DNA of 64,000 nt from Pristiophorus japonicus (Eukaryota), in the NCBI RefSeq assembly GCF_044704955.1, contig NC_091999.1:21762001-21826000 (forward strand). The letters are read 5' to 3'. The notes beneath the pieces were generated by a model that made no database searches, was not told the DNA's origin, and saw nothing but the letters and a program-made list of their open reading frames with translations. Each line of letters opens with the position of its first letter. Positions within the stretch are counted from its first letter, which is position 1. This document shows, piece after piece, positions 9,091 through 64,000 of this stretch. A program made the translations under genes and the position numbers.

Positions 9091-9654
9091 TTGCGCAGTC
9101 ATAGCTGTGCCCTTTGTTTAATGGCCCTGCTGCACGTGGAAACATTTTCACAGAATCACAGTGCCCGAATTTGTTGGACTTATTGCCAGCTGCCACCGCG
9201 TTTTCTCCGCGCTCTCCCTGTATTTTGAGTGCCCTCCTCTCCGAGCGATTTTGATGAGGTCGCAACACCAACAAAAGACTTCCTGCCCGCTCCCTCCCGA
9301 GATTGGTCCAGCCAGTCCTCCACTGCGGCAGCAGAAGATAGTGCACTTGTTTTCTTCATTGCTTTTGTAGCCATTTTGTTGGTCCTCTGAAGAATTTGTT
9401 GAAATGTTTTTGTCCCGTTACCCCCTCCGTGGGCTGGACTCTATCCACGGCGTTGCTTTGCTAAGGATCGCATTTACCAGCCAGGATCCGAACCACGGCC
9501 CGCTGCTGCCTAGAATCGGCGTGTAAGGCCAATTTTTATCCACTGGGCATTATTTTCCCATTTTTCCACCAAACTTTCACCCTGCACCGTGAGGAAATTC
9601 GTAGTCCTTTCAACGTTACATGGGCGGTATTTAGCTTTGACCAAACTCGGGCCC
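9091..9654. mobile_element. Probable non-autonomous DNA transposon remnant, one end only
   Basis: CpG-rich island absent from other unit junctions; ends in aaactcgggccc (reverse complement GGGCCCGAGTTT), resembling PIF/Harbinger-type termini; no matching second TIR seen. Confidence 0.35.
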
Positions 9655-10249
9655 ATAGATTAGTACAGCACGGTCAGTGGCAATTCAGCCAATAGAGTCT
9701 GAGCCGGTTCTTCCCAAAACCAATCAAATTAGTCTCACTCCACCACTCTTTTGCTATATCCCTGCATTTTTCTCCTTCAGGTATTTATACAATTTCATTT
9801 TGAAAGTTAGTCTTGAATCTGTATCTACCACCCTATCAGGCAGTACACTCCAAATCCTAATCAGTGGTTGCAAAAATAAGTTTGTCCATATATTGCCTCT
9901 GGTTCTTTTGTCAATCACCTTACATCTGAAACAGTTTCTATTTATTTACTCTATCTAAACCCTTGATGATTTTAAACACATCTATCAAATCTCCTCTTAC
10001 TTCTCTCCTCTAAGGAGTAGAATCCCATCTTCTCCTGTCTCTCCACAATGACTGAACTCCTTCATGCCTGGTACTCAACTCGTGAATCACCTCTTAACCT
10101 TCTCTTCTCCACGGAGCATAACCACAGCTTATCCAGTTTCAGAATATATGAACGCCCGGTGAAGGAATTGGGTGCAGAAAATTCCAGCTGAGGAATCCTC
10201 ATCGATGGAAACAGAAACACTGCAAAGGGAAAAATAGGAATCACTTTGG

Positions 10250-10490
10250 CTGAGAGAATGATGAAGGGAGGGAGGACTGGAGCAAGCGAAGAGTGGAGTG
10301 ATGGAGGGAGGGAGGGGTGGGTGCAGGTAAGGAGCGATTGATGGAGGGAGCGATGGAGGGAGGGAGGGATGGGTGCAGGTAAGGAGCGAGTGATGGAGGG
10401 AGTGTTGGAGGTATGGAGGATGGGAGCGATGAAGGGAGAGAGGGATGGAGAGATGGATGGAGGGTGAGAGGGATGGTGAGAGGGAGTGAT
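10250..10490 (+). repeat. Purine-rich (GGA/GGGA) low-complexity tract
   Basis: gatggagggagggaggg-type repeats; equivalents at ~20055-20365, 27708-27890, 38750-38995, 50090-50310 and 59680-60445. Confidence 0.9.
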
Positions 10491-10859
10491 GGGCTATCTC
10501 CCAATTAACCTGAGCAAAACTCTCCATGATTTTGAACACTTCTATTAAGTGGCCCAAACCTGCTCGGCTCTAAGGAGAACAGTCCCAGCTTCCAGCTGCT
10601 CTGATGGTGTAGCTCACAGAGGGTAAAACTCAGGTTCCTTGAGTCCTTCTGCCTGGGGCACTTTGAGATGTTCCTTGCGGAATTGCCGACACTTTTATAT
10701 GGACCCAGTGTAAATCCTAGTGTGGGAATGACATCCAAGGCAAGAAAAGAGAACTGGCCCCTGATAATAAATGGATCAGTGTAATTCTGGTCTCAGGCCC
10801 TCAACTTCAGACACGATGAGCTGAATGGAAATTTAAAAAAATACAAGCTGTGATATGTT

Positions 10860-11312
10860 CAAGCCTCGGCTCAGTGTGGTCGCTCTCGGCTCCTGACTCA
10901 GAATGTCACAGATACTAAACCCACTCCAGAGACCTGAGCACAAAATCTATGCCGACATGCGCAGTGCCAGTACTGAGGTCGTGCTGCACGATCATATGTG
11001 CCATCTTTCGGGGCAGACATTAAACTGAGGCCCATATTCCAACTCAGTTGGATTTAAAGGACTCATGGCACTCTGTTAAAGAGCAGAGGAGTTCTCCATG
11101 GTTTCAAGGTCAAATATGTAACCCTCAAGCAACTTCTGAAAAATTGATTATCTGATCATTATTCCATTGCTTTTTCTGGTCTCTTGCTGTGCACAAAATG
11201 GCTGCCCCATTTCCTACATTGCAACAGTTACCACACTTCCAAAGTAATTAATTGGCTGTAAAGCACTTTGTGACAACATGAAGTCGTGATAGGCGATATA
11301 TAAATGCACGCT
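10860..11312 (+). mobile_element. SacSINE1/DeuSINE-type SINE (unit copy 1)
   Basis: ggctcagtg head, cagtactgagg..gtgctgcac core, ggctgtaaagcacttt...tatataaatgca tail. Confidence 0.9.
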
Positions 11313-12184
11313 GTTGCTAAATTTCAACATTTGAAAATACAATTTGCATTATGTGAAACGTTCAGATATTAAAGTGATTGTAGGACACTCCTCTGGTCAC
11401 TGGTGTAACTTGTTTAGTTTCAAAAGGTTAAATCCTCCACTAAATGGAGATCCAGTGGAATAGCAGCCTGTTCATAGATGATCCCAGCAGCAGAATATTT
11501 AGAACTGAATTATTCATTTTAATATTTATTCGCTTTGATAAAAATCACATCTGTTTTAATTGAACAAAACTGAAGCCAACTTCACTGTTCGACATATTTC
11601 TATTAATGTTGTATCAACTGTCAATATTCTTAAAATAATTGCTTGTTGTGAGTTGAAACTAATCAATAACTGACTCTGTTAATCTGATTCTGCTGCCATG
11701 AACACTTCATGGGAACCAGTGAGTCGTTTATGTAAATAATCAGATAAAAAGAAGTCCCAGATTAGAGTATTGAGCGATGGAAACACAATAAATGTGTCCC
11801 CACCAACACAGCACAGAAATAAAGATAGAGAGAAATGCAAATCTCTCAACAGATTCCAGCAACAATTGTTTTTTGGTACATTTCACTAAATTATAGGAGA
11901 ATAAAATAAAGATGATACCCACGGACAAAATGGGGAAAGATTCTAATCACCGTACACAGCAACATCACAAGTGTGACAGTGGAGATTTCCTGTATCTCTC
12001 CCTCTCCTATTTCCACTTTCCATCTTGTCTCTCAAGAAGAGATAATTGGCCTTCCCGCACAACTAGATGTCAACATCTAACAAATGTTTTCCTTGAGCCC
12101 CAATGATATGCCTCGGAACAAATTGATTGGGTTGCACAGAAGGAGCATTAATCCAAAATATGACACGTGTATTAAATTATCTGG

Positions 12185-12460
12185 CATTGTTTGATGGAAC
12201 AGTGCAGAGGGATCTTTACACTGTATTTAACCCGTGCTATACCTGCCCTGGGTGTGTTTGATGGGACCGTGTAGAGGGAGCTTTACTCTGTTTCTAACAC
12301 CGTGTTGTACCTGCCCTGGGTGTGTTTGATGGGAACATGCAGAGGAAGATTTACTCTGTTTGCAACCCGTGCTGCACCGGCGCTGGGAATGTTTGATGGG
12401 ACGGTGTAGAGGGAGAATTACTCTGTATCTGACATCTGCTGTACCTGCCCTGGGAATTAC
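12185..12460 (+). repeat. ~67-bp tandem repeat
   Basis: gtgtttgatgggac.gtgtagagggagctttactctgtatctaacccgtgctgtacctgccctggg about 4 times; equivalents at ~22062-22270, 29570-29905, 40685-40895, 52003-52280 and 61937-62222. Confidence 0.9.
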
Positions 12461-12837
12461 TGGGTTGAGTGTAGTAATAGCTGAGACAGGGTGCAGTGTA
12501 ATATAAACACTGACATGGTGAATTATAATAAAAGCAGAAACAGGGTCTAGTTGAATAGAAACAGAGGCATGGTCTCGTGCAGTAATAATGGTGACAGGGT
12601 CTCGACTAACATAAACAGAGACATGGTCTAGTTTAGTAATGTGAAAGGATGGGGCCAGTGTAATATAAACAGTGTCCTTGTCTAGTTTAATATAAACAGA
12701 TTCAGCTTATTGTGTAATAGAAACAAAGGCATGGCACATTCCAGCAATATCTGAGTCAGAGTCTAGAATAATATTAGTAGCTCTACTGCAATAATAACTG
12801 AGGTGGAGCCTTGTGTCGTAATTACTGATACAGTGAT

Positions 12838-13257
12838 ACTTTAATTGGTTCCTGGCATGTGGGTGTGGGTGCCGCTGACGAGGCTAACATTGATTCTCTA
12901 TCCATAATTGGCCTTGAGAAGGAGGTCATGTGCGGCCACCTTGAACCGCTGCTCTCCGTGTGGTGAAGGGACCCCCACAGTGTTAGGGAGTGGGTTCCAT
13001 GAATTATACCCAGCGACTATGAGGGACGGTAATAAATTTCCTAGTCAGGATGTTGTGTGATTTGGAGTGAACTTTGAGGTGGTGGTGTTCCCACGAGGCT
13101 GCTGCACTTGTCCTTGTAGGTTGAAGAAATCGTAGGTTTGGAAACTGCTGTCGAAGATGTCTTTGCGAGTTGTTGCAATATATCGTGTAGATAGTAATCC
13201 CTGCAGACATGGTGTGCCGGTGGTGGAGGGAATAAATATTTAACGTGGTGGATGGGG
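12838..13257 (-). mobile_element. CR1/L2-group LINE 3' end (partner tail of the SINE at 633-1080)
   Basis: HHRRT.SAV.TI.KMHCSNSPRHLRQH.PNLR motif in unit copies at 22545-22950, 30192-30605, 41223-41640 and 62498-62917; deleted in copy 5. Confidence 0.75.
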
Positions 13258-13319
13258 TAATATAAACTGGAGCAGGGTCTAGGGTATTAATAACTGAGAC
13301 AGGCTCTGATGTATTACAA

Positions 13320-14480
13320 AATCATAGAATAGTTACAGCACAGAAGAGGGCCATTAGGCCCAAGTTGCCCGTGCCGCTCTCTGCGAGAGTATTTCAGCTA
13401 GTCCACACTCCACCCTTTCCCGTAGCCCTGTGAATTTTCTTCCTGCAGGTACTTACCCAGTTCTCTTTGCAATGCCATGATTGACTCTGCCTCCACCACC
13501 CTTTCAGGTAGTGCATTCCAGATCCTAACCGCTCGCTGTTTAAAAACGTTTTCCTCATGTCGCCTTTGGCTCTGCTGCCAATCACCTTAAATCTGTGGTC
13601 CTCTGTTCTCGACCCTTCCACCAATGGGAACAGTTTCTCTCTAGCTATTCTGTCTTGACAGTTTATTTTTCTGAACACCTTTATCAAATCTCCTCTCAAT
13701 CTTTTCTATTCTACAGAGAACAACTCCAGCTTCCCAAGACTACCACGTAACCGAAGTCCTTTATCCCTGGACTCACACTTGTAAATCTTTTATGAACCCT
13801 CTCTAAGGCCTTCACATCTTTCCTAAAATGAGGTGCCCAGAATTGGACCCAATACTCTAGTTGAGGCTGAACCAGTGTTTTATAAATATTCATCATAACA
13901 TCCTTTCATTTGTATTCTATGCCTCTAATTATGAAGCCCAGGGTACCGTATGCTTTTTAGCCACATTCTCAGCCGCCTCTGCCACATTCAATGAGTTGTG
14001 CATGTATACCCCCAGTTCACTGCGTTCATGCATCCTTTAGAATCGTATCCTTTAGTTTATTTTGCCTCTCCTCGTTCTTCTTACCAAACTTTATCACTTC
14101 ACAATTTTCTGCGTTTAATTTGCCACGTGTCCACCCATTCCACCAGCATGTCAATGCCATCTTGCAGTCATTATTATCCTCCTCACTGTTCACTATGCTT
14201 TCAAGTTTGATGCCATCTATAAATTTTAAAATTGTGCCCCTACACCCAAGTCTAAGTAATGAATATGAATCATGAAAAACAGTGTTCCTAATGACAACCG
14301 CTGCGGAACTCCACTATATACCTTCCTCCAATCCCCAAAAAAAACCACTACTCTCTGATTCCTGTCACTCAGCCAATTTCATACCCTGCCGCCACTGTCC
14401 CTTTTATTCTATAGGATTCAACTTTTCTGCAAATGATATTTTCAAGATACTTTATCAAACGCCTTTTGGAAGTCCACCAC
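13320..14480 (-). mobile_element. Old CR1 LINE, part of the repeated unit
   Basis: MRGDLIKVF, LVQPQLEYWVQFWAPHFRKD; equivalents at ~30670-31800, 41705-42860, 52590-53690 and 63550-64000. Confidence 0.9.
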
Positions 14481-15023
14481 ATCAACCATATAAACTGAGA
14501 CTCGGTCTTGTGCAGTAAAAACTGCGACAGAGTCTGGTGTAATGAGAGAAACAATAATTGCAGATTTATTAACCGTATGCCAGGTACAGGTGCAGTTTCA
14601 TGTTGGCCATCACTTGCACCAATAATCATACACTCGAGGTGTATAACAGGGCATTCTGTCTGGCGGTGAGGTGATCACTGGTCAAAGAAGCTCAGAGACT
14701 GGTGGTGGTCTGCTCATTATCCTCGGTGTGAATTAATCCCCTTTCCCACTGAACACTGCAAACAGACATGGTCACCTTGGTAACGGAATGGTCAGTGTGA
14801 CATCACTTTCTAAAGCAGAACACGCAAGACAATGTGTTATCAATAAATATTAAAGGTAATAAACGACCTACCATTAGCTGCAGAATAACATTTAAAGGAA
14901 AAAAAGTAATGGTTGAAGCTAATCATTTATCTTTGTTGATAGCACTTGCACGTATTATAAATGATGTGTCTTATACACACACACACATACACAGACACAC
15001 ACACACGCACACATACACACACA

Positions 15024-15622
15024 CATCATAGGCAGTCCCTCGGAATCGAGGAAGACTTGCATTCACTTTAAAAATGAGACCTTAGGTGGCTGAACAGTCC
15101 AATACGAGAACCACAGTTCCTGTCACTGGTGGGACAGAGAGCCGTTGAGGGAAAGGGGCGACGTGGTGTGGGACAGGTTTGCCGCACGTTCTTTCCGCTG
15201 CCTGTGCTTGCTTTCTGCATGCTCTCAGCGATAAGACTCGAGGTGCTCGGCACATTCCCGCATGCACTTCCTCCACATAGGGCAGTCTTTTGTCTTTGGC
15301 CCTGCTGTATGCCTCAGAGACATGGACCATGTCGAGTACAACCCTCAAGCCGCTGGAGAAATACCACCAACGATGTCTCCGCAAGATCCTGAAAATCTCT
15401 TAAGAGGACAGACGCACCAACGTTAGCGTCCTCGACCAGGTCAACATCCCCATCATTGCAGCACTGACCACACTTGATCAGCTCCGCTGGGCAGGCCACA
15501 CTGTTCGCATGCCAGACACTAGACTCCCAAAGCATGCACTCTGCTCGGAACTCACGTCAAACGAGCGAAAGGTGGGCACTGGAAGCGTTACAAGGACACC
15601 CTCAACGCCTCTCTGAAAAGGT
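15024..15622. mobile_element. RTE-clade LINE 3' end with inverted 5' segment, inserted in (CA)n
   Basis: Minus 15024-15300 encodes CPTSDRNCGSRIGLFSHLRSH with an (ATG)-type tail; plus 15300-15622 encodes LLYASETWT...LRWAGH.VRMPD.RLPK. Confidence 0.9.
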
Positions 15623-16185
15623 ACACACACACAGACACATATAGCGAACACTTTGTGTATGCTATTTTCAGTTGTTCGTCTTAACCAAATGAGCGATACA
15701 GTTTTTGAAGACATTAGGACCCTGAGGCCGCCCATCCAGTGGTGCTGTGAGGTCACGGTTCCAGGCTCCTTCTGACATAACCAGTGGGTCACGTGACAGC
15801 TCCAGAGAAAATATTGCAGGAAAAACAATTCTTATCATTAATTAACTGAGAGAAATTGGCACAGCACACCACAAGTGTGAATTAGTAACCTTTAACACAC
15901 AGTGTGCCACTAAGTAGTGCAAAGTGCAGTGCACTATTGCCCACATTCAGACTTGTCCCTCAATACCAGTCCATCTCTGGGAGATTGTTACAAGATTCAC
16001 TCCATCCTTTCAGCACAAATATTAACGACATGGCACCAGATCAATTAGGCATTGCACACAACCTTTGATAGCTGTTAAGGAATCGAAACATATGTTCCAA
16101 CCAAAAAAGTATTGCATCCTCCTACCCACACACATGTATATCTTTATTTATATTAATATCTCTCCAGCGTCTATATATCTTCTGT

Positions 16186-16630
16186 GTTGCTTTGGCATTC
16201 TCGTGTCCTGGCATGCAAACTATGTGGCCTGCCCAGCGGAGCTGATCAAGTGTGGTCAGTTCTTCAATGTTGGGGATGTTGGCCTGGTCGCGGACGTTAC
16301 AAGGACATGCTCAAAGCCTCCCTGATAAGGTGCAACATCCCCACTGACACCTGAGAGTCCCAGGCCAAAAACCGTGCTAAGTGGAGAAAGTGCATCCGGG
16401 AGGGTGCTGAGCTACTGGAGTCTCATCGCGGAGAGCATGCAGAAATCAAGTGCAGGCAGTGGAAAGAGCGCATGGCAAACCATTCCCACCCATCTCTTCC
16501 TTCAATGACTATCTGTCCCACTGTGACAGAGACTGTAATTCCTGTAATTGGACTGTTCAGCCACCTAAGAACTGATTTTAAGAGTGGAAGCAAGTCTTCC
16601 TTGATTCCGAGCAATTGCCTATAATGATGG
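16186..16630. mobile_element. RTE-clade LINE 3' end with inverted 5' segment and 8-bp target-site duplication
   Basis: TSD tcttctgt at 16178-16185 and 16631-16638; empty site in other copies; minus 16186-16295, plus 16295-16630. Confidence 0.9.
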
Positions 16631-17085
16631 TCTTCTGTCTAGCTAACAGACGCATGGTCAAGTGCCGAAATAACTGAGACAGGGTCCGTTGTGCAATAAA
16701 TTGAAATATAGAGCCTGGAGTGGGTGTTTATTCAAAAAATATCTGAGACCGAGACAAAAGTGAGACATACTGAGCATCGTCTCACACAAACAAACATTGT
16801 CCTGTGAAGCGCAATGGATATATGGCCCAGTGTAACATAAAGCGACACAGGGCCTAGTGTAACATCAAAGGATACAGGGCCTCGTGTAATATAAACAGAG
16901 ACAGGTTATAGTGCCATTTAAACAGAGACAGAGCCCAGTGAAATTTAAGCAGACAAGGCGTAGTGTAATATAAACAGAGACATGATGTAGTGAAATTTAA
17001 ACAAAGACAGGGTCTAGAGTAATATAAACATGGACAAGGTATAGTGTATTAAAAACGGAGACACTGCCTCGTGTAATATAAACTT

Positions 17086-18780
17086 AAGAACACAAGAACA
17101 TAAGAAATAGGAGCAGCAAGAGACCACCTGACCGCTCGAGCCTGCTCCGCCATTGAATAAGCTCATGGCTGATCAGATCATTGACTCAGCTCCACTTCTC
17201 TGCCTGCCCCCCATAACCCTTTATTCCCTTATCGCGCAAAGATCTGTCTATCACCGCCTTAAATATATTCAATAACCTAGCCTCCACAGCTCACTGGGAC
17301 AGAACATTTCATAGATTTACAACCCACTGAGAGAAGAAATTCCTCCTCATCTCAATTTTAAATAGGCGGCCCCTTATTCTGAGACTATGTCCCCTTGTTT
17401 TATGTTGCCCTGTGAGTGGAAACATCCTCTCTGCATCCACTCTGCCAAGCCCCCTGATTATCTTATACGTTTCGATAAGATCACCTCTCATTCTTCTGAA
17501 TTCCAATGAATAGAGGCCCAACCTACTCAACCTTTGCTCATAAGTCAAACCCCTCTTCCCCGAAATCAACCTAGTGAACGTTTTCTGAACGGGCTCCGAA
17601 GCAAGTAAATCGTTTCTTAAATATGGAAACCAAAACTGCACGCAGTATTCCAGGTGTGGCATCACCGATACCTTATGGTGTTGGTTCAATGGTGTAATGG
17701 TGAGCACTCTGGACTTTAAATTCAACGATCCGTGTTCAAATCTTAAGATAGATATAGCTGTGGAAAGCCGTCCCTGCTTTTATACTCCATCCCCTTTGCA
17801 ATAAAGGCCAAGATACTATTGGCCTTCCTGATCACTTGCTGTACCTGCATAGTATCCTTTTGTCTTTCATGCACAAGTACCCCCCGGTCCCGCAGTCCTG
17901 CGACAATTTGCAATTTTTCTCCATTTAAATAATAACTTGCCCTTTGTTTTTTTCTGCCAAAGTGCATGACCTCGCACTTTCCAACATTATACACCATCTG
18001 CTAAATTTTTGACCACTAACTTAGCCTGTCTGTGAACTTTTGCAGATTTCTTGTGTCCTCATCACACATTGCTTTTCCTCCCATCTTTGTATCATCAACA
18101 AACTTGGCATCGTTACACTCAGTCCCTTCTTCCAAATCATTTATTTAGATTGTATACTGATCCCTGCGGCCCCACACTAGTTACTGGTTGCCAAACAGAG
18201 AATGAACCATTTATCCAGACTCTCTGTTTTCTGTTAGTTAGCCAATCCGCTATCCATGCTAATATATTACCCCCAACCCCGTGAACTTTTATCTTGTGCA
18301 GTAACCTTTTAGGTGGCACCTTGTCAAATGCCTTCTGGAAGTCCAAACGCACCACATCCACTCGTTGCGCTTTATCCTCCCTGTTCGTTACATCCTCAAA
18401 GAACTCCAGCAAATTTATCAATCATAAATCCATGCTGACTCTGCCTGACCGAAGTTTCCTTTTCCAAATGTCCTGCTACTGCTTCTTTAATAATGAGTTC
18501 CAACATTTTCCCAACCACAGATGTTAGGCTAACTGGTCTATAGTTTCCTGTTTTTTGTCTGATTCCTTTTTTAAATAGTGGCGTTACATTTGCAGCTTTG
18601 CAATCTGCGGGGACCTCCTCAAACTCCGGGCAATTTTGGTAAATTACAAGCAATGCATCCACAAACCCTGCCGCTACTTTTCTTAAGACTCTAGGCTGCA
18701 AATCATCAGGTCCAGGGGAATTATCTTCCTTTAGTCCCAATATCCTACTGAGTACCACCTCCTTAGTGATTGTGATGGTC
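17086..18780 (-). mobile_element. CR1 LINE linking units 1 and 2
   Basis: aagaacataagaa tail; PHLEYCVQFW, LDFQKAFDKVP, GNYRPVSLTS; same right junction (atggtca...gattagt) as at ~47550 and ~58660. Confidence 0.95.
17683..17743 (+). pseudogene. tRNA-Gln-derived pseudogene (anticodon position reads TTA), 3' acceptor strand missing
   Basis: ggttcaatggtgtaatggtgagcactctggactttaaattcaacgatccgtgttcaaatct closely follows vertebrate tRNA-Gln; interrupts a CR1 sequence. Confidence 0.9.
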
Positions 18781-23235: not shown

Positions 23236-23339
23236 GTCCAGGGTCTCAATTACCAAGACAGGGACTGCAGGGTGGAAGAGTAAACTGACCACAGAACCGA
23301 GGTAAGGGGGCCATTCAAGTGGGGGAGCAAAACGAAATG

Positions 23340-24260: not shown

Positions 24261-24384
24261 TCCTAGCGTGATTTAAAAATATTCCTTGTCCATTGCAATA
24301 ATAAGTGCGGCAGGATCTAGTGTTTTATAAATAGAGACGGGTCTTAGTGTAATATGAACCTAGACATGATGTAGTTATAGAATA

Positions 24385-25310: not shown

Positions 25311-25359
25311 AGAAGAATGGTATAGTTCAGTACTAATTGAGAAAGCGTATCGTGAAATT

Positions 25360-32314: not shown

Positions 32315-32332
32315 GACACACATACATTTGCA

Positions 32333-47549: not shown

Positions 47550-47980
47550 TTCATAGATTAGTATGGCACAGAAGGTGATAATTCAGCCCACAGAGTCTGC
47601 GCCGGCTCTTTCGAAGAACAATCCAGTTACTCCCACTCCCGTGCACTTTCCCTATATCACTGCATTTTTTCCTCCTTGTAGTATTTGTACAATTTCTTTT
47701 TGAAGGAAACTATTGAATCTATATCTACCACCCTACCAGGCAGTACAATACAAATCTTAACCAGTGGTTGCATAGAAAATTGCGTCCAAATATCGCCTCT
47801 GGTTCTTTTGTTAATCACCTTACATCTGAAACAGTTTCTAGTTATTTACTCTATCTAAACCGTTGATGAATTTAAACAGATCTATCAAATCTCCTCTTAG
47901 ACTTCTCTCCTCCAAGGAGAACAATCCCATATTCTCCACTTTCTACATATTAACTGAAGTCCCTCATGCCTGGTAATAAT

Positions 47981-50676: not shown

Positions 50677-51130
50677 TCAAGCCTCGGCACAGTGGGATGA
50701 CTCTCGCCTGTGATTCAGAACGTCACAGATACTAAACCACATTCCAGAGACCTGAGCCAATAATCTATGCCGACAAGCCCGGTGCCAGTTCTGAGGGAGT
50801 GCTGCACGGTCCGAGATACCGTCTTTCAGGGCAGGCAATAAGATGAGGCCTCATCTTTCTGCTCAGTTGGATTTAAGGGATTCATGGCACTATATTGAAG
50901 AGCAGATGAGTTCTCCAGGGTTTCCAGCGCAAATATTTATACTTCAACCAACATCTGAAAAACAAATTATTTGATCAATATGTCATGCTCTTTGTGGGAG
51001 CTTGCTGTGCACACATTGGCTGCCATGTTTCCTACATTACAACAGTGAGCACACTTCCAAAGTAATTCATTGGCTGTAAAGCACTTTGGGACATCATGAG
51101 GTCAAGAAAGGCACTATATAAATGCAGGGT
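50677..51130 (+). mobile_element. SacSINE1/DeuSINE-type SINE (unit copy 5)
   Basis: Same sequence and flanks as other copies. Confidence 0.9.
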
Positions 51131-54100: not shown

Positions 54101-54181
54101 TGTTGAATAAAATAAAATGCTGAAAAATAATGGTTGGAGCTAATAGTTTATCTTTGTGAAATGCACTTGCACACCTTATGA

Positions 54182-54367
54182 NNNNNNNNNNNNNNNNNNN
54201 NNNNNNNNNNNNNNNNNNNNNNNNNNNNNNNNNNNNNNNNNNNNNNNNNNNNNNNNNNNNNNNNNNNNNNNNNNNNNNNNNNNNNNNNNNNNNNNNNNNN
54301 NNNNNNNNNNNNNNNNNNNNNNNNNNNNNNNNNNNNNNNNNNNNNNNNNNNNNNNNNNNNNNNNNNN
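54182..54367. other. Assembly gap (N run)
   Basis: Run of N at the position of the (CA)n tract in other copies. Confidence 1.
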
Positions 54368-55041
54368 TGTGTGCTCTTTTCAGTTGTTCGTCTTAAGCAG
54401 ATGAGTTGTTCTTCTGGTGGATGTTTGGACCCTGCGGCCGCCCATCCGGCGGTGATGTGAGGTCACGGTTCCAGGCTCTGTCTGTCACAATCAGTGTGCC
54501 ATGTGAAAGCTCAATAGAAAATACTGCAGGAAAAACAATCCTTAAAATTAAAGAACTGGGAGCAATTGGCACAGTACAACACAAGTGTGAATTAGTAACC
54601 GTTAACACACAGAGTGCCACTAAGTATTGCAAAGTGCAGTGAATTGCTCACCTTCAGTCCTGTCCCTCAATCCCAGTCCATCTCTGGGAGATTGTTACAA
54701 GATTCACCCCATCCTCTCAACACAAATATTACCGACACAATGCCAGATCATTTCGACATTGCCCACAACTCTTGTTACCTATTAGTGAAACTAAACATAT
54801 GTTTTAACCAAAAAAGTATTGAATATTCCCACCCACACACATATATATCTTTATTTTTATTAATATCTATCCACCGTCTATATATCTTCTGCTTATCTAA
54901 CAGTCGCAGAAATAACGGAGACAGGGTATGTTGTGCAATAAATAGAGATATATTCATTGGAGTGGGAGTTTATCCCAAAACCATCTGAGACCGGAGCGAA
55001 GTGAGACACGCTGAGCCTCGGCTGACACAAACAGACATTGT

Positions 55042-56511
55042 AACATTATAAGACCATAAGAATATAAGAAATAGAAGCAGGAGTAGACCATACGGCCCCT
55101 CGAGCCTGCTCAGCCATACAATACGAAGATGGCTGATCCGATCATGGACTCAGATCCACTTCCTTGCACGCTCGCCGTAACACATTAATCCCTTATCGCA
55201 TAAGAAACTGTCTATCTCTGTCTTAAATTTATTCAATTTCCCGGCATCCACAGCTCTCGGAGGCAGTGCATTCCACAGATTTACAACCCTATGAGAAAAT
55301 AAGTTCCTCCTCATTCCAGTGTTAAATGGACGGTCCCTTATTCTAAGATTATGCCCCTAGTTTTAGTCTACCCTATCAGTGGAAACATCCTTTCTGCATC
55401 CACCTTTTCGATAAGATCACCTCTCATTCTTCTGAATTCCAATGAGTAGATGCCCAACCTCCTCAACCCTTCCTCGTAAGTCAAGCCCCTCATCTCCGCA
55501 ATCAACCTAGTGAACATTCTCTGGACTTCCTACAAAGGAAGTATAACCTTTCGTAAATGTGGAAAACAAAGCTGTACGCAGTTTTCCAGGTGTGGCCTCA
55601 CCAATACTCTGTATAACTGTAGCAAGACCAACCTGCTTTTATACTCCATCCCCTTTGCAATAAAGGCCAAAATTCCATTGGCCTTCATGATCACTTCCGT
55701 TCCCTGCATATTAACCTTTTGTGTTTCATGCACAAGTACCCCTAGGTCCCGGTGTAGTGCAGCACTTTGCAATTTTTCTCCATTTAATTAAAAAGTTGCT
55801 CTTTGATTTGTTCTGCCAAAGTGCATGATCTCACACGTTCTTACATTATACTCCATCTGTCAATTTTTCCCCACTCACATGGCCTGTCTGCGTCCTTTTG
55901 CAGATTTGTTGTGTCTTCCTTACACATTGCTTTTCCTCACATCTTTGTACTTTGTATCGTCAACAAACTTCTCTGTGTTATACTCGGTCCATTCATTCAA
56001 TTTGTTAGTATAGATTGTAAATAGCTGGGGCCCCAGCACTGATCCCTGCGGCACGCCACCATTTACTGATTGCCAAACCGAGAATGAACAATTTAGCCCG
56101 ACACTCTGTTTTCTGTTAATTAGACAATCCTCTATCAATGCTAATATATTACCCCAACCCCGTGAAGGTTTATCTTGTGAAGTTATCTTTAATGTGGCAA
56201 CATGTCAAATGCCTTCTGGAAATCGAAATACACCACATTTACTGGTTCCCCTTTATCCACGCTGTTCGTGACATCCTCAAAGATTTCCACCAAATTTGGC
56301 AAACAAGACTTCCTCTCCATAAATCTATGCTGAGTCTGCCTGAGCGAATTATGATTTTCCAAATATCATGCTACAGCTTCTTTAAAAATGAACTCCAACA
56401 ATTTCCCAAACACAGATTTTAGGCTATCTGATCTATGGTTACCTGCTTTCTGGCTGTCTCCTGTTTTTAAATAGGGGCCTTACATTTGCAGTTTTCCAAT
56501 CTGCTGGGTTT
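55042..56511 (-). mobile_element. CR1 LINE inserted only in copy 5
   Basis: Splits cagacattgt|cttgtgaag, which is contiguous at ~33115 in copy 3; GVPQGSVLGPQLF motif. Confidence 0.92.
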
Positions 56512-56645
56512 TCTTGTGAAGTGCAATGATACGTGACCTATTCCAACATAAAGGGAGACCGGGTCTAGTGTAATATAAACAGAGGCAGGGCCTAGTGTAA
56601 TATAAATAGCTACAGTGCCCAGTGCAATATAAATATAAAAATATA

Positions 56646-58659
56646 AGTACATAAGAACTAGGAGCAGGAGTAGGCCAACTGGCCGCTCTAATCTGCTCAG
56701 TCATATAGTAAGGTCATAGCTGATCTGTTCATGGAGTCAGCCCCACTTCCCTGCCCGCTCCCAATAATTTTTTATTCCCTTATCGCTCAAAGATCTGTCT
56801 GTCTCCGCCTTAAATATATTGAATGTCTAGCCTCCACAGCTCTCTGGGGCATAGAGTTCCATAGATATGCAATCCTCGCAGAGAAGAAATTCCTCCTCAT
56901 TTCAGTTTTAAATGTACTGCCCCTTATTCTGAGACTATGTCCCCTAGTTTCTTTCTCCCCTTTGAGTGGAAATATCCACTCTGAATTCATCTTGTTGAGC
57001 CCCATCGTTTTCCAATCTTTCAGTAAAATCAGCTCTCATTCTTCTGAACTCCAATCTGTATAGGCCCAACCGACTCAACCTATCTTAATAAGTCAACTAC
57101 CTCCTCTCCAGACTCATGCTAGTAAACCTTCTCTGGACAGTCTCCAATGTAAGTATATCCTTCCTTAAATAGGGAGACCAAAACCTTATTGCAGTACTCT
57201 AGTACAATATCGTGTACAGTTCTGCCCACTCACTTAGCCTGTCTATATCCCTTTGCAGATTTTTTGTGTCCTCACAATTTTCTCACCCATCTTTATATCA
57301 TCAGCAACCTAGGCTACATTACACTCAGTGCCTTCATCCAAAGTCATGACTATAGATTGTAAATAGTTGAGGACCAAGCACCGATCCCTGCGGCACCCCA
57401 CTAGTCACTGTTTGCCAACCGGAAAATGACCCAACTATCCCGACTCGCCGATCTGCTAGTTAGCCAACACTCTACCCATGCTAGTATATTAACACCAATC
57501 CTGTGAACTTTTATCTTGTGCAGTAACCTTTTATGTGGCATCTTATCGAATGCATTCTGGAAATCCAAATACACCACATCCACTGGTCACGCACTATCCA
57601 CCCTGCTTGTTACATCTTCAAATAACTCCGGCAAATTTGTCAAACATGATTTCCCCTTCATTAAACCATGCTGACTCTGCTTGATGCTTTTCTTAATGTC
57701 CCGCTACTGCTTACTGAATGGAATCCAGCTTTATTCCAATGGCTGACGTTCGGCTTATTGAACTATAGTTCCTTGCTTTTTTTCCGTCTTCTTGTTTAAA
57801 TAGGGGGCGTTATATTTGCAGTTTTCCAATCTACTGGGTCCGCCCCAGAATCCAGGGAATTTTGGTAGATTACAGCCAAAGCATCCACTATCTCTGCAGC
57901 CACTTATTTTAGGACCCTAGGATATAAGCCGTCAGGTCCAGGGGACTTGTCCGTCTTGAGTCCCATTATTTTACCGAGTACTACTTCATTAGTGATCGTG
58001 ATTGTAATACGCTCCTCCCTCCCTATAGCCCCTTGATGTTCCAATATATTAATGTTTTTAATGTATTCTACCGTGAAGACAAATACAAAATATTTCTTCA
58101 ACGACTTTGCCATTTCTTTGGTCTCCATTATTAATTGCCCAGTCTCATCCTCTCGGTGACGAATATTTACTTTAGCCAATCTTTTCCTTTTTATGTACCT
58201 GTAGAATCTTTTACTACCTGTTTTTATATTTCGGGCTAGTTTACTTTCATAATCTATCTTCCCTCTCTTTATGTTTCATTATTTCTTTGCTAGGTTTTTA
58301 AAGTTTCCTAATCCTCTGACCTCCCACTCCTCTTGGCCAAATTGTATGCATTTGTTTGCAATTTGATACCATCCCTTGTTTCCTTAGTTAGCCCCGGATG
58401 GTTATCCCTTCTCATGCAATGTTGCCTTCTCATTGGGATATATTTTTGTTTCGAGTTATGAAATATCTCCTTAAATGTCGGCCACGGCTCATCAGCTGTC
58501 CATCCTTTTATTTATTTTCCCAGTCTACTTTAGCCAACTTTGCCCTCATAGTGTCCTTCATTTAAACTTAGGACACTGGTTTGTGAATCGATTCTCACCG
58601 ACCACCGCCCCCCCCTTCCCCCCGCCGCAACTGAATTTGAAATTCAACCATGTTATGGT
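56646..58659 (-). mobile_element. CR1 LINE linking units 5 and 6
   Basis: Colinear with 44479-47549 and shares the right junction ctgaatttgaaattcaacc...catagattagt. Confidence 0.92.
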
Positions 58660-59716
58660 CACTCATAGATTAGTACGGCACACAGGGTGGCATTCAGCCC
58701 ATAGATTCTGTGCCAGCTCTTTCGAAGAGCAATCCCATTAATGTCAATCCCCCGCTCGTTCCCTATATCCCTGCATTTTTTCTCCTTCAAATACTTACAC
58801 AATTTCCTTTTGAAGAGTACTATTGAATCTGTATCTACCACCCTATTATGCAGTACACTCTAAATCCTAACCAGTGGTTGCATAGAGAATTTCGTCTACA
58901 TATCGCTTCTTGTCCTTTTGTCAATCACCATCCATCTGAAACAGTTTCTGTTTATTTACTCTGTCGAATGATTGACATTTTCAAAAAAGTCTATCAAATC
59001 TTCTCTTCGACTTCTCTCCTCTAAAGAACAGAATCCCATCTTCTCCTGTCTCTTCACATTAACTGAAGTCCCTCATCCCTGGTACCATTCTCTTACACAT
59101 GCCCTCAACCGTGCCCCCTCCAAGGAGAGCAATCACATCTTCTCCAATCTCCACTTTAACTGAAGTCCCTCATGCAGGTACCAATCTACTGAATCACCCC
59201 TCACCCTTCTCTGCTGTATGGAGTACAGCCCCAGCCTCTCCAAGTCTGTCCGTGTAGCGAGAGCTTGCGAGCTACCATACCGTACACACAATGGCAACAA
59301 GCTCCAGGCGGGCACTGGCCCATTCTCAACAGCGAGAATGGGGAGTGAAAACGAGAAGCTGAAAGTCGGCGATGATTTAAAACAATTTTAAAGATGTTAC
59401 CCTTCTATTTTTTATTTATGAAAAGGAAAAATATCCCGACTGACCCAACGAGAATTTCTACCCAGTGCCAGTTCCCCAGCCAACTCCCTCTCCGGAAAGG
59501 TCACCATTTTATTTCTCATCAGTTTGTTTTTCGGCAGGTGGATGAAATATATCCATTTGCTGTCGCTTTCTCTCTTATTTGTTAATATAAGAAATTGGGT
59601 GCAGAAAATTCAAGCTGAGGAATCCTCATCGATGGGAGCAGAAAATCTGCAAAGGGAAAATAAGAAACGGCTGAGCTGAGAGAAGGATGGAGGTAGGGAG
59701 GAGGGGAGCAAGGAAG

Positions 59717-60195
59717 GGGTGGTGTGATGGAGGGGTGAACATAAGAACATAAGAATTATGAACAGGAGTAGGCCATCTAGCCCTTCGAGCCTGCTCCGCT
59801 ATTCAATAAGATAATGGCTGCTCTGGCCGTGGACTCAGCTCCACTTACCCGCCCGCTTCCCGTAACCCTTAATTCCCTTATTGGTTAAAAATCTATCTAT
59901 CTGTGACTTGAATACATTCAATGAGCTAGCCTCAACTGCTTCCTTGGGTAGAGAATTCCACAGACTCACAACCCTCTGGGAGAAGAAATCCCTTCTCAAC
60001 GCGGTTTTAAATGGGCTCCCCCTTATTTTGAGGCTGTGCCCCCTAGTTCTAGTCTCCCCGACCAGTGGAAACAACCTCTCCGCCTCTATCTTTTCTATCC
60101 CTTTCATTATTTTAAATGTTTCTAGAAGATCACCCCTCATCCTTCTGAACTCCAATGAGTAAATACCCAGTGTACTCAATCTATCATCATAACAT
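59717..60195 (-). mobile_element. Short CR1 3' end inserted in the purine tract of copy 6
   Basis: aacataagaacataagaa tail; YSLEFRRMRGDLLETFKIM...WNSLPKE. Confidence 0.92.
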
Positions 60196-60814
60196 AATGA
60201 GGTGGAGGGATGGTCGGAGAGTGGGAGGGATGGGTGCGGGGAGGGAGAGATTGATGGAGGGAGGGATGGAGGTATGGAGGGCTGGAAATGGAATGAGCGT
60301 GACACGGATGGTGGGAGGGAGTGATGAAGGGAGGGAGGGAAGGTGAGACTGGTGGAGGGTGGGAGGGATGGAGGGAGGGAGGGATGATGGATGGGAGGGA
60401 AGGAGAGACGTGTGGTGGGAGGGAAGTATATTGGGAGAGAGTGATGGAGTATCTCCCATTTTACCCGATCAAAACTCTTCATATTCTTGAGCACCTCTGA
60501 TAAGTGGCCCATAACCTGCTCGGCTCTAAGGAGAACAATCCTAGCTTCCAGCTGCCATGATGGTGCAGCTCACACAGTGTAAAACTCAAGTTCCGTGACT
60601 CCTTCTGCCTCGGGCACTTCCAGATGTTCCTTGTGGAATCGCAGTCACTTTTATATCGACCCGGTGGAAACCCCAGTGTGGGAATGACATCCCAGGCAAG
60701 ATCAGGGAACTCGCCCGTGATAATAAGCGGATCGAAGTAAGACTAGGCTCATGCCCTGAAATTCAGGCAGGATGAACTGAATGACAACACTTTAAAATGC
60801 AAGCTGTGATATGT

Positions 60815-61258
60815 TCAAGCCTTGGCTCAGTGGGATCACTCTCGCCTCTGACTCAGAATGTCACAGATACTAAACCACACTCCAGAGAACTGAGCCCATA
60901 ATCTATGCCGACATGACCGCTGCAAGTACTGAGGGAGTGCTGCACGGTCAGAGCTGCCGTCTTTCGGGGCAAACATTAAACTGCGGCCCCATTTTCCCAC
61001 TCAGGTGGATTTAAAGGATTCATTGCACTATCTTAAACAGCTGAGGAGTTCTTCAGGGTTTCCACGGAAAACATTTGTCCCTCAAACAATTTCTGCAAAA
61101 CAGATTATCTGATCATTATTTCATTGCTGTGTATGGGATCCTGCTCTGCACAAATTGGCTGCCACATTTCCTACATTACAACACTTCCAAAATAATTAAT
61201 TGGCTTTAAAGCATTTGGGACATTATGAGGTCACGAAGGGCGCGATATAAATGCTAGT
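60815..61258 (+). mobile_element. SacSINE1/DeuSINE-type SINE (unit copy 6)
   Basis: Same sequence and flanks as other copies. Confidence 0.9.
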
Positions 61259-62957
61259 TCTTTCTAAATGTTAATATTTTTAAATACAAGGTGTGATATG
61301 TGAAACGCTCAGATATTACTGATGGTCACTGGTTGAACTTGTTTAGTTTCAATGGGTTAAATCTTCCACGAAATGGAGATCCAGTGGAATAGCAGCATGT
61401 TCAGAGATGTTCCACTGATTTCAGCTGCAGAACTTTCAGAACTGAATTATTCATTTTAATATTTATTTCCTTGATATAAATCACATCTGTTCTAATTGAA
61501 CAAAACTGAAGCCAACGTCACTTTTCGACATATTGCTACTTCTGTGTACCCACTGTCAATATTCTTCAAATAAGCCATTGTTGTGAGTTGAGACTAATCA
61601 ATAAGTGACTCTGTTGTCATGATTTTGCTGCCATGAACACTTCGTAGGAACCATTGAGGCCTTTATGCAAATAATCACAGAAATAGATGTCCCAGATTAG
61701 AGTATTGAGCATCAGAGACACCATGAATGTTTCTTCACCAACACAGCATTGAAATAAAGATAGACAGAAATGCAAATCTCCCAACAGACACCAGCAACAA
61801 TTGTGTTTTGGTATATTTCACTAAATTTTATTGGAATAAAGGAAAGATGATACCCACGGACAGAATGGGGAAATACTCCTTCTCGTCAGCATGTACAGCA
61901 AAATCACTAATGTGATAGAGGAGGTTTATGCTTAAAGGTGTACCTGCCCTGGGAGTGTGTGATGGGAGATTGTAGATGGAGTTTTACTCTGTATCTGACA
62001 TATGATGTACCTGCCCTGGGAGTGTTTGATGGGGTAGTGTTGAGGGAGTTTTTCTCTGTATCTAACCCACACTCTACCTGCCCTGGGTGTATGTGATGGG
62101 GTAGTATAGAGGGCACTTGACTCTGTACCTGACACATGCTGTACCTGGCATGAGAATGTTTGATGGTGCGATGTAGAGAGCGCTTTACTCTGTATCTAAC
62201 ACATGCTGAACCTGGCCTGGAAGTTACAGAGTTTAGTGCAGTAATAACTGAGACCGGGTCCAGTGTAATATAAACAGAGAAATGGTCTAGTTTAGTAATG
62301 GAAAAGGTTGGGGCTAGTGTAACATAATCCATGTCCTGGTCTAGTTTAATATAAACAGAGACAGGGTCTTGTGTAATAGGAATAAAGGCATGCCATATTG
62401 CAGTAATATCTGATATCGGGCCTAGTACAATATTAATAGTTCTAGTGCAGTAATAACTGAGATAGGGCTCCGTGCAGTAATTACTGATGCAGGGACATTT
62501 CTTTATTCGCTTCTGGCATATGGGTGTGGGTGTCGCTGGCAAGGCAAACATTGATGGTCTATTCTTAATTGGCCTTGATAAGCAGATGGTAAGCTGCCCC
62601 TTGAACCGCTGCAGTCCATGTTATGAACGGACCTCCACATTGTTTGGTAGCGGGTTCCAAAATTTGACCCAGTGACTATGAAGGAACGGTAATAAGTTCC
62701 TAGGTCAGGATGATGTGTGATTTGGAGGGATACACGGAGGTGATGGTGTTCCCATGAGCACGCTGCCCTTGTTCTTCTTGGTGGAAGAGGTCGCAGGTGT
62801 GGAAAGGGCTGTCGAGGATATCTTGGCGAGTTGCTGCAAAGCATCTTGGGGGTTTTAATCACTGCAGACATGGTGCGCCGTTGGGGGTGGGAGGGATTAT
62901 TTAATGTGGTGGATGGAGTAAAATAAACTTGAGATGGGTCTACTGTAGTGTAGTGGA

Positions 62958-63548
62958 GTCTTTTTGTGTCCTCGTCACACATTGCTTTTTCTCCCATCTT
63001 TGTATCATCAGAAAACCTGGCTATGTTGCTCTCGATGCATTCTTCAACGTCGGTAGATTGTACATAGAGGGGTTCCCAGCACTGATTCCTGCAGCATCCC
63101 ACTAGTTACTGAATGCCAACCCGAGAATGAACCTTTGATCCTGACTCTCGGTTTTCTGTTAGTCAGCTAATCCTCTATCCATGCTAATATATCAGCCCGA
63201 ACCCCGTGAATGTTTATCTTGTGCAGTAACCTTTTATGTGGCACCTTATCAAATGCCTTCTAGAAGCCCAAATACATCACATCCACTGGTTCCGTTTTAC
63301 CCACCCTGTTTGTTACCTCCTCAAAGAATTCCTGAAAATTTGTCAAACATGACTTCCCCTTCATAAATCCACGCTGACTTTGTCTGACCGAATTTTGCTT
63401 TTCCAAATATCCTGCCACTGCTTCTTTAATAATGGACTCCAACATTTTCCCAAGCGCAGATGTTAGACTAACTGGTTTATAGTTTCCTGCTTTTTGCCTG
63501 CATCCTTTTGCAAATAGGAGCATTAAATTTGTAGTTTTCCAATCTGCT
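62958..63548 (-). mobile_element. CR1 LINE internal fragment specific to copy 6
   Basis: GNYKPVSLTS, GFMKGKSCLTN; replaces part of the unit. Confidence 0.85.
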
Positions 63549-64000
63549 AATCACCTTAAATCTGTGTCCTTTGTTCTCGATCTTCCCACCAATGGGAACA
63601 GTTTCTCTCTACCTACTCTATCTAGACCCCTTATGATTCTGAACACTTCTATGAAATCTCATCTCTACCTTTCTGCTCTAAGGAGAAAAGTTCCAACTTC
63701 TCCAGGCTATCCACATAACCGAAGTACCGTATCCTTGGAACCACAATTGTAAATCTTTTCTGAATCCTCTCTAAGGCCTCACATCCTTGCTAAAGAATTG
63801 GACACAATATTCCAGGTGAGGCTTAAACAGTGTTTTATAAACGTTCATCATAACTTCCTTTCTTTTGTACTCTATGCGTGTATTTACGAAGCCCAGCATC
63901 ATGTAATCTATTGACCATTGTCTCAACCGGCCCTGCCACCTTCAATGATTTGTGCACATATACCATCAGGTCACTGTGTTCATGCACCTACTTTAGCATT

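What the first reader, a model, noticed from the sequence alone, without database searches (positions are those of the whole stretch)
9654..64000. Six-copy tandem array of an ~8-11 kb unit hidden under transposon debris
Seen: the same ordered set of blocks recurs, with the exon-B landmark at 10618, 20496, 28017, 39122, 50438 and 60574. Old insertions (SINE, LINE tail, old CR1, linking CR1) are shared, while younger insertions are copy-specific. Inference: an old local amplification with birth-and-death decay. Copies differ by many substitutions, so it is not an assembly duplication.
Basis: partly seen in the sequence, partly recalled or inferred. Interest (0 to 1): 0.8.

Follow-up and report, generated by a model that had tools for sequence, protein, structure and literature searches.

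The report
Old tandem duplication of transposon debris
A roughly 10 kb stretch of shark DNA, built almost entirely from dead jumping-gene fragments, was copied head-to-tail six times long ago just upstream of an antibody (IgM) gene cluster and has been decaying ever since; it is a real but ordinary kind of duplication.

Summary
Self-BLAST shows colinear forward off-diagonals up to 4.9 kb at 78-81% identity. They cover 89% of 9654-64000, and the longest chance hit is 31 bp. Block A occurs six times, with landmark spacing of 7.5-11.3 kb.

The copies differ by K2P 0.18-0.20 and form a star-like tree. This points to one short burst of amplification followed by independent decay, not an assembly artefact. 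The N gap sits between flanks that are colinear with copies 3 and 4.

The unit is not a gene hidden under debris; it is the debris.
- "Exon B" is a remnant of a LINE ORF2 C-terminal tail on the minus strand. It falls in a bin of high-copy repeat shared by three organisms.
- Of 264 ORFs of 62 aa or more, only 7 hit a Pfam family credibly, and all 7 hit reverse transcriptase. None hit an Ig domain.
- Recombination signal sequences occur no more often than by chance.

Two things remain open. A 167-bp core in block C evolves about half as fast as the rest. The scan also holds three unchecked notes on other DNA of this genome describing similar arrays beside other IgM clusters.

Interest is low: a new member of a known kind.

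The parts
9654..10073 (-). Left edge of the array: 3' tail of an old LINE ('LINE-J', block D-end) with no unit body to its left. The flank 9100-9653 is unique within the window.
   Evidence: (K2P 0.171-0.207 to the other D-ends)
10144..19208 (+). Copy 1: blocks A (lacking its first ~620 bp), B, C, 27-bp minisatellite, D. Private inserts at 15027-15622 and 16186-16631.
19314..26985 (+). Copy 2, the most rearranged. A and the first part of B are colinear (19314-23226). After that come a separate LINE(+) at 23335-24259, a B-type LINE-tail remnant at 24562-24700 and an expanded 27-bp minisatellite at 25317-26584. There is no C core and no D.
   Evidence: (L23 K2P 0.28-0.30)
26986..36626 (+). Copy 3: A, B, C and minisatellite (26986-33516). 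D is replaced by a private 3-kb insert (33517-36503) carrying minus-strand ORFs. Only the last 122 bp of D are left (36504-36626).
   Evidence: Dimer_Tnp_hAT E 0.023, below cut-off
36626..38019 (+). 'Linking' LINE(+) nested inside LINE-J at the copy 3/4 junction. Its twin lies at 47975-49359 (K2P 0.181).
   Evidence: (RVT_1)
38019..47975 (+). Copy 4, the reference unit. A 38019-40892; B 40668-43385; C 43380-44088; minisatellite 44104-44480; private LINE(-) 44615-45660; D 45664-47975.
49359..59084 (+). Copy 5, preceded by the linking LINE at 47975-49359. It contains the assembly gap 54182-54367, a private LINE(-) at 55040-56418 and a deletion of c4 41257-41732.
59177..64000 (+). Copy 6, cut by the window end. 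A lacks its first ~220 bp. Private LINE-tail insert 59735-60199, private LINE piece 62972-63453, then the start of the old LINE of block B.
38985..39265 (-). 'Exon B' landmark of copy 4: a remnant of a LINE ORF2 C-terminal tail. Equivalents lie at 10480-10760, 20360-20640, 27880-28160, 50300-50580 and 60440-60720.
43615..43781 (.). 167-bp slowly evolving core inside block C. Equivalents lie at 15858-16027, 32636-32802 and 54568-54734, with an inverted extra copy outside the array at 1634-1800.
44132..44476 (.). 27-bp minisatellite that follows block C. Other tracts lie at 16632-17083, 25317-26584 and 33167-33570, and outside the array at 1-344, 1141-1468 and 8285-9066.
40697..40894 (.). 67-bp tandem repeat at the A/B boundary. 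Other tracts lie at 12188-12454, 22070-22267, 29573-29903 and 61939-62224. Contig depth on the copy-1 tract is extremely high in all four runs laid.
54182..54367 (.). Assembly gap (186 N) between blocks B and C of copy 5. The flanks are colinear with copies 3 and 4. Not filled.

Best explanation
This is an old, local, head-to-tail segmental duplication. A roughly 10 kb stretch already consisted of nested dead transposons. It held at least four minus-strand LINE fragments, a SINE, a 67-bp and a 27-bp tandem repeat, and an unclassified repeat module (block C plus the minisatellite). It was amplified to six copies, plus a partial one at the left edge, in a short burst. The likely mechanism is unequal crossing-over, and the founding event may have been recombination between two LINE copies in the same orientation.

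Since then the copies have evolved independently and mostly neutrally. There has been no homogenisation. Each copy has picked up its own LINE and DNA-transposon insertions and its own deletions.

The array carries no recognisable gene.

Shown: the duplication, its extent, the divergence, the star-like tree, the transposon nature of the landmark and of most of the unit, and the absence of Ig domains and recombination signals.
Inferred: the mechanism (unequal crossing-over, LINE-LINE recombination) and the age.
For: - Colinear alignments up to 4.9 kb at 78-81% identity cover 89% of 9654-64000. The longest hit in shuffled controls was 31 bp.
- The same block order and the same transposon junctions recur in each copy.
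- K2P in a 1.65-kb core shared by all six copies is 0.176-0.202. In the ML tree, terminal branches are 0.084-0.101 and the only supported inner branch is about 0.0105. Other blocks give 0.135-0.274.
- Private insertions have clean edges, for example 59735-60199.
- The unit junction lies inside one LINE(-). Its tail (profile positions 101-213) is block D-end and its upstream part (54-123) opens block A. The linking LINE(+) is nested in it.
- The left limit of homology, 9654, is that LINE's 3' terminus.
- Only RVT_1 is credibly found by Pfam, in 7 of 264 ORFs of 62 aa or more.
- Rfam at gathering threshold and ARAGORN both found nothing.
- Of 295 windows tested for codon periodicity of substitutions, the lowest p was 0.002, which fails Bonferroni correction.
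- 'Exon B' matches LINE ORF2 tails: BLASTP E 5e-05, and the profile hit falls at the same profile positions (104-134) in all six copies.
- The bin holding 'exon B' in copy 1 has depth 23k, 40k, 65k and 4.4k in runs of three organisms. Its neighbouring bins have 1-5k in X1 and 89-3,819 in X5.
Against: - The LINE-tail profile hit on 'exon B' is significant in only 1 of 6 copies (E 0.0028). One is marginal (E 0.061) and four have E of 1 or more. A DNA profile of the window's younger LINE tails hits 0 of 6 landmarks.
- A 167-bp core in block C has 27 changes where about 56 are expected (binomial p 3.8e-07), so not everything is decaying neutrally.
- Distances differ between blocks. Copies 3, 4 and 5 are closer to one another in B and C than in A, so the history is not a clean single burst.
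- At 'unit-specific' positions 11608-11779, between 14 and 37 different contigs of the source organism carry the non-reference letter (rows with fewer also occur), more than the five other copies in this window. One contig joins 10920 to 11304 without the SINE that all six copies carry. The family therefore has members elsewhere.
- Three unchecked notes describe similar arrays beside other IgM clusters.
- The right end of the array lies outside the window.
Confidence: 0.8

Rival explanations
1. The array is one instance of a recurrent module that travels with shark IgM clusters. It, or a proto-array, existed before the IgM clusters were dispersed and was copied along with them. Most of the 'amplification' would then be older than this locus, or the flank of IgM clusters would be prone to amplify repeatedly. 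This overlaps with the best explanation and does not exclude it.
For: Three first-reader notes on other DNA of the same genome describe 9-14 kb tandem arrays next to or upstream of IgM clusters (s1-877906, s1-874943, s1-878040). Here the IgM V segment is noted 4.8 kb beyond the window end, about where copy 6 would end. At positions 11608-11779, 14-37 distinct contigs of the source organism carry the non-reference letter (rows with fewer also occur); organism B has up to 19 such contigs there and organism C up to 6. One paralogous contig lacks the SINE.
Against: The notes are unchecked and I could not fetch their DNA, so homology between the arrays is not shown. The contig counts fit a low-copy old transposon family equally well. 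The tool itself warns that depth is not copy number. No Ig exon or recombination signal lies inside the units.
Confidence: 0.35
2. Each unit carries a functional element: the 167-bp core of block C, under purifying selection as a regulatory element or a non-coding RNA. On this view the array is kept for that element.
For: The core has the lowest divergence of 173 sliding windows (0.084 against a median of 0.164). It has 27 changes in 167 columns against a background of 0.335 per column (p 3.8e-07; z -3.0 against 20 non-overlapping windows). Transitions and transversions are both roughly halved. The reduction is seen in every pair of copies, which argues against a few gene-conversion events. 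The inverted copy at 1634-1800 differs from the unit copies by 5-11% in the core but by 31-35% in the flank.
Against: Rfam gave no match on the core at E up to 5. Alignment folding showed 0 and 1 compensatory pairs on the two strands. The core belongs to a repeat module that also occurs outside the array, so part of its conservation may be a property of the transposon family. Copy 2 has lost it. The rate drop is only about twofold.
Confidence: 0.12
3. Each unit carries a multi-exon, minus-strand protein-coding gene, as in the first reader's companion notes. On this view the array is a decaying gene family.
For: Splice-like AG/GT signals and short open frames exist on the minus strand. One example is an AAG|GTGAGC site inside the block C core of copies 3-5.
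Against: The two named exons are a LINE-tail remnant and a low-complexity repeat. Stops interrupt every frame of 'exon B' in every copy, and some stops are shared. There are no credible Pfam domains apart from reverse transcriptase. Substitutions show no significant 3-periodicity. A 115-aa ORF from block A found no relatives. I built and searched no joined exon model.
Confidence: 0.04
4. The pattern is not a duplication. It is either independent insertions of the same interspersed repeats that happen to lie in the same order, or an assembly artefact.
For: Nearly every block belongs to a repeat family that is abundant in three organisms.
Against: Order, orientation, junction points and the non-repeat spacers are shared over as much as 11 kb, for example copies 4 and 5 along their whole length. 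The 16-20% divergence is far above assembly error or allelic difference.
Confidence: 0.02

Closest known systems
Tandem segmental duplications of vertebrate genomes
   Same: A kilobase-scale unit repeated head to tail at one locus. Transposon content is shared and so predates the duplication. Private insertions follow it. Repeat-mediated unequal recombination is a plausible origin. [quoted passage not shown] I saw only that abstract.
   Different: Segmental duplications are usually catalogued at 90% identity or more (recalled). This array is at 80-84%, so it is much older than those usually listed, and it has six copies with no gene.
Macrosatellites (kb-unit tandem arrays such as D4Z4; recalled, no call)
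   Same: A unit of several kb, repeated in tandem.
   Different: Macrosatellite units are kept nearly identical by concerted evolution, and their copy number varies. Here terminal branches are 0.084-0.101 and there is no sign of homogenisation. Copy-number polymorphism was not testable.
Shark IgM heavy-chain mini-clusters (V-D-D-J-C units present in many copies)
   Same: A multi-copy unit of about 10-20 kb in an elasmobranch genome.
   Different: No V-set or C1-set domain in 264 ORFs. Recombination-signal matches are 0 and 1 against 0.93 and 0.70 expected by chance.
Repeat-mediated (Alu-Alu or LINE-LINE) non-allelic homologous recombination duplications (mechanism recalled)
   Same: Every unit junction lies within one LINE, and the array's left limit of homology coincides with that LINE's 3' terminus.
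   Different: The right boundary lies outside the window, so the second parental LINE cannot be seen. After about 0.1 substitutions per site, no hybrid-element breakpoint can be recovered.

Membership tests
Tandem segmental duplication | Two or more adjacent copies in the same orientation, colinear over kilobases, including spacers and transposon junctions | tested here: met
   six copies of block A; copies 4 and 5 are colinear over about 11.3 kb
Tandem segmental duplication | Similarity far above chance and not due to assembly error | tested here: met
   longest hit in shuffled controls 31 bp.: 16-20% divergence between copies
Tandem segmental duplication | Copy number confirmed by spanning long reads | not testable with these tools
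   only short Logan contigs were available, and the longest piece listed was about 330 bp
Macrosatellite (homogenised array) | Units kept highly similar by concerted evolution | tested here: not met
   K2P 0.176-0.202 and a star-like tree with long terminal branches
Shark IgM cluster or decayed Ig cluster | Immunoglobulin V-set or C1-set exons | tested here: not met
   0 of 264 ORFs of 62 aa or more. Shorter, decayed remnants were not scanned.
Shark IgM cluster or decayed Ig cluster | Recombination signal sequences (heptamer, 12- or 23-bp spacer, nonamer; consensus recalled) | tested here: not met
   0 and 1 matches at up to 3 mismatches, against 0.93 and 0.70 expected
LINE (non-LTR retrotransposon) fragment, for the 'exon B' landmark | Similarity to the C-terminal part of LINE ORF2, in the right order and spacing | tested here: met
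   BLASTP E 5e-05.: all six copies map to profile positions 104-134, but only 1 of 6 is significant. In copies 2-4 an upstream peptide maps to positions 21-50 or 21-71 at the expected spacing.
LINE (non-LTR retrotransposon) fragment, for the 'exon B' landmark | Belongs to a high-copy interspersed family | tested here: met
   bin 10493-10691 is deep in all four runs of three organisms, and a joint 9998 to 10557 is present in all four
   Only Pfam RVT_1 was obtained. An 8-bp repeat at the 3' end of the young copies is CR1-like from memory only.
Protein-coding gene in the unit | An open frame conserved between copies, with an excess of third-position substitutions | tested here: not met
   stops in all frames.: lowest p 0.002 over 295 windows.
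Structured RNA gene (the block C core) | An Rfam match or compensatory base changes | tested here: not met
   no match on the core.: 0 and 1 compensatory pairs. With five near-identical sequences, power is low.

The most novel reading that the evidence does not exclude
Tandem arrays of this transposon-mosaic unit are a regular companion of sawshark IgM clusters. On this reading they were inherited or regenerated with each cluster. Each unit would carry one constrained 167-bp element acting on the neighbouring antibody locus, for example as a boundary, a regulatory element or a recombination-promoting element.
Probability: 0.1. Interest if true: 0.55.

Novelty: new member of a known kind. Interest (0 to 1): 0.22.

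Why it matters
In itself it matters little. Old tandem duplications of repeat-rich DNA are common in large vertebrate genomes, and this one carries no gene.

It is useful in three ways.
- It is a caution. Its 'exon-like' landmark is a LINE remnant, so companion notes that read a spliced gene into these units should be treated sceptically.
- It is a dated, well-resolved example of burst amplification without later homogenisation, sitting directly beside an IgM cluster.
- It gives a testable lead. If the arrays noted beside other IgM clusters are homologous to this one, their unit-by-unit tree would show how shark antibody clusters spread through the genome.

Tried and rejected
1. Decayed IgM cluster. 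Rejected for lack of Ig domains and recombination signals. ORFs under 62 aa were not scanned.

2. Protein-coding exons. Rejected. The 115-aa ORF 40043-40387(-) from block A found no relatives: 5 candidates, none at E of 0.001 or better. That search only sees proteins of 0.55-1.75 times the query length.

3. RNA genes. Rfam at gathering threshold gave 0 matches and ARAGORN gave 0. The Rfam E-value search of 43350-44110 gave six weak hits, none on the core. The best was mir-297 at E 0.0029 and 30.5 bits against a gathering score of 90, and it sits on a simple repeat.

4. Copy number from reads. Not possible. All ten runs are Logan contigs, and depth there is not copy number.

5. Fetching paralogous arrays. 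No tool reaches other parts of this genome. The findings look-up by sequence was blank, which means nothing.

6. DNA-level LINE profile on the landmarks. 0 of 6 hit.

7. Terminal inverted repeats around the 3-kb insert of copy 3. None convincing among 8 weak pairs. Its hAT assignment rests on one sub-threshold Pfam hit in 1 of 8 ORFs. No hit appeared at E of 0.01 or better.

8. Literature. Three searches listed nothing on tandem arrays beside shark IgM clusters. I read only listings and abstract starts, no full text, and supplements were closed.

9. Rows dropped. ORFs under 62 aa, ORFs lying wholly before 9600 and ORFs containing N were left out. Only copies 1, 3, 4 and 5 enter the tests on blocks B and C, because copy 2 lacks those blocks and copy 6 runs off the window.

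Full report
**What the window is.** It has 64,000 bases at about 42% G+C, with one run of 186 N at 54182-54367. Earlier notes of this scan place it in a sawshark genome; a note names it the Japanese sawshark. They also place an IgM heavy-chain cluster just beyond the window end, with V and a pre-joined DJ at +4.8 kb and Cmu1 at +12 kb. On that basis the cluster is on the + strand and the array lies 5' of it. I did not check those notes.

**The observation.** A self-blastn gives many long forward off-diagonal alignments at 78-81% identity, the longest 4,939 bp. A text dot-plot shows parallel diagonals from about 9.6 kb to the window end. Forward hits of 400 bp or more with an offset over 5 kb cover 48,418 of 54,347 bases (89%) of 9654-64000. 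Block-shuffled controls never gave a hit longer than 31 bp in five shuffles. The six landmark positions align at 89% mean column identity, with spacings of 7.5-11.3 kb.

**The gap.** The two sides of the N run (52583-54179 and 54368-55041) match, in order and on the same strand, 41732-43324 and 43413-44088 of copy 4, and 30695-32296 and 32441-33123 of copy 3. The flanks therefore behave as one continuous unit. The paralogues have 88 and 144 bp between the equivalent points. Nothing coding spans the gap, and I did not fill it.

**Anatomy, in copy 4 coordinates.**
- Linking LINE(+): 36626-38019.
- Block A: 38019-40892.
- Block B: 40668-43385.
- Block C: 43380-44088.
- 27-bp minisatellite: 44104-44480.
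- Private LINE(-): 44615-45660.
- Block D: 45664-47975.

**State of each copy.**
- Copy 1 (10144-19208) is nearly complete but lacks the first ~620 bp of A.
- Copy 2 keeps A and half of B (19314-23226), then only remnants and an expanded minisatellite.
- Copy 3 (26986-33516) has lost D to a private 3-kb insert.
- Copies 4 and 5 are colinear along their whole length.
- Copy 6 runs off the window.
- A lone D-end at 9654-10073 marks the left edge. The 550 bp to its left have no other match in the window.

**What the unit is made of.** A profile of LINE ORF2 C-terminal tails, built from seven window copies, finds minus-strand LINE pieces at the start of A, in B, in D and in D-end of the units. A DNA profile agrees. 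D-end (profile positions 101-213) and the start of the next A (54-123) are two parts of a single LINE(-). This LINE spans what looked like the unit boundary, and the linking LINE(+) is nested in it.

Pfam finds RVT_1 in 2 of 10 long ORFs and in 7 of 264 ORFs of 62 aa or more from 9465-64000. The other 13 family hits, to 12 families, are single ORFs at E 0.0002-0.0093, and none is an Ig family. TRF finds a 67-bp repeat and a 27-bp minisatellite in the copies.

**The 'exon B' landmark.** The landmark translates on the minus strand, with stops in every frame of every copy, to a string that resembles the LINE tail motif. BLASTP of the copy 5 ORF against a clear LINE tail gives E 5e-05. With filters off, the profile maps a minus-strand peptide of every copy to positions 104-134. 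The hit is significant in only 1 of 6 copies (E 0.0028), marginal in one (E 0.061) and at E of 1 or more in four. In copies 2-4 an upstream peptide maps to positions 21-50 or 21-71 at the expected spacing. The DNA profile hits none of the six, so this is an older or different LINE.

**Public contigs laid on copy 1.** Contigs of four runs from three coded organisms were laid on 9100-15050 at 80% likeness. The numbers laid were 68,515, 106,117, 57,451 and 12,824.
- The flank bins 9100-9696 have depth 0-11.5 in the three runs that are not from the source organism.
- Of the 27 bins from 9697 on, 23 exceed 1,000 in both runs of organism B.
- The 'exon B' bin stands at 23k, 40k, 65k and 4.4k, well above its neighbours.
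- The tool warns that depth is not copy number. I use it only for presence and absence.

**Age and mode.** In a 1.65-kb stretch shared by all six copies, K2P is 0.176-0.202. The ML tree has terminal branches of 0.084-0.101 and one supported inner branch of about 0.0105, splitting {1,2,5} from {3,4,6}. Other blocks give 0.135-0.274, with copies 3, 4 and 5 somewhat closer to one another in B and C. The two linking LINEs differ by 0.181. The LINE at 23335-24259 differs from them by 0.28-0.30 and is probably a separate insertion.

I read this as a short burst of amplification followed by long independent decay, with some mosaicism from unequal exchanges. With recalled vertebrate neutral rates of about 1-2e-9 per site per year, 0.09-0.10 per lineage means roughly 50-100 million years. 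It would be longer if shark rates are slower. This is an inference.

The left limit of homology coincides with the LINE's 3' terminus. That is what recombination between two same-orientation LINE copies would leave, but the right end is out of view.

**Gene content.**
- Of 295 windows tested for 3-periodicity of substitutions, none passes correction; the lowest p is 0.002.
- Rfam at gathering threshold and ARAGORN find nothing.
- Recombination-signal patterns occur 0 and 1 times, against 0.93 and 0.70 expected.
- A block A ORF has no relatives in the word-based protein search.
- I built no joined exon model.

**What does not fit a purely neutral, purely local story.**

First, a 167-bp core in block C is the least diverged of 173 sliding windows (0.084 against a median of 0.164). 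It has 27 changes against about 56 expected (p 3.8e-07; z -3.0). The reduction is seen in all pairs of copies. It also holds against an inverted extra copy at 1634-1800, whose flank is 31-35% different. No RNA family or covariation explains it.

Second, at positions 11608-11779, which look unit-specific, 14-37 distinct contigs of the source organism carry the non-reference letter in most listed rows, with fewer in some rows. One contig lacks the SINE that all six copies carry. Related sequence therefore exists elsewhere in the genome.

Third, three unchecked notes describe similar arrays beside other IgM clusters. I could not fetch that DNA.

**Literature.** Three searches listed nothing on such arrays next to shark IgM clusters. 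One abstract, of preprint 10.1101/2024.11.22.624925 and seen only in the listing, says tandem duplications predominate in vertebrate genomes.

**Verdict.** This is a real, old, six-copy tandem segmental duplication of a transposon mosaic with no gene. It is ordinary in kind. The minor open points are the slow core and the possible link to IgM clusters.

Noticed in passing
window 43615-43781 (also 15858-16027, 32636-32802, 54568-54734; inverted copy at 1634-1800): A 167-bp core inside block C evolves about half as fast as the rest of the unit. It is 89-95% identical to an inverted copy outside the array, whose flanks are only about 67% identical. No Rfam match and no covariation.
   Followed up: partly
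window 33517-36503: A 3-kb insert private to copy 3 carries several minus-strand ORFs of 120-190 aa. One of them has a sub-threshold match to the hAT dimerisation domain (E 0.023). It is probably a relic of a DNA transposon. No terminal inverted repeats were found.
   Followed up: partly
window 12188-12454, 22070-22267, 29573-29903, 40697-40894, 61939-62224: A 67-bp tandem repeat sits at the A/B boundary. On the copy-1 tract, the only one laid, summed contig depth reaches 0.16 to 10 million across the two bins in runs of all three organisms. It appears to be a very abundant satellite-like element shared by several species.
   Followed up: no
window 1-344, 1141-1468, 8285-9066, 25317-26584, 33167-33570, 44132-44476: A 27-bp minisatellite recurs in both orientations, inside and outside the array. 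It always follows block C where that block is present, which suggests that block C plus the minisatellite is one mobile module.
   Followed up: partly
window 1141-3341: Upstream of the array, an inverted block C plus minisatellite abuts a LINE(-). This is the region another note calls the unit's 'birthplace'. I saw only that these pieces are repeat modules and did not test the inversion idea.
   Followed up: no
window 9654-64000: LINE fragments that look like independent insertions lie mostly on the minus strand, about 8 against 2 by my count. The bias is not significant. If real, it would fit plus-strand transcription through the region.
   Followed up: no
window 42857-43006: Within the old LINE of block B, substitutions between copies fall unevenly on the three codon positions (6, 3, 16; p 0.004). 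This does not survive correction for 295 windows.
   Followed up: no
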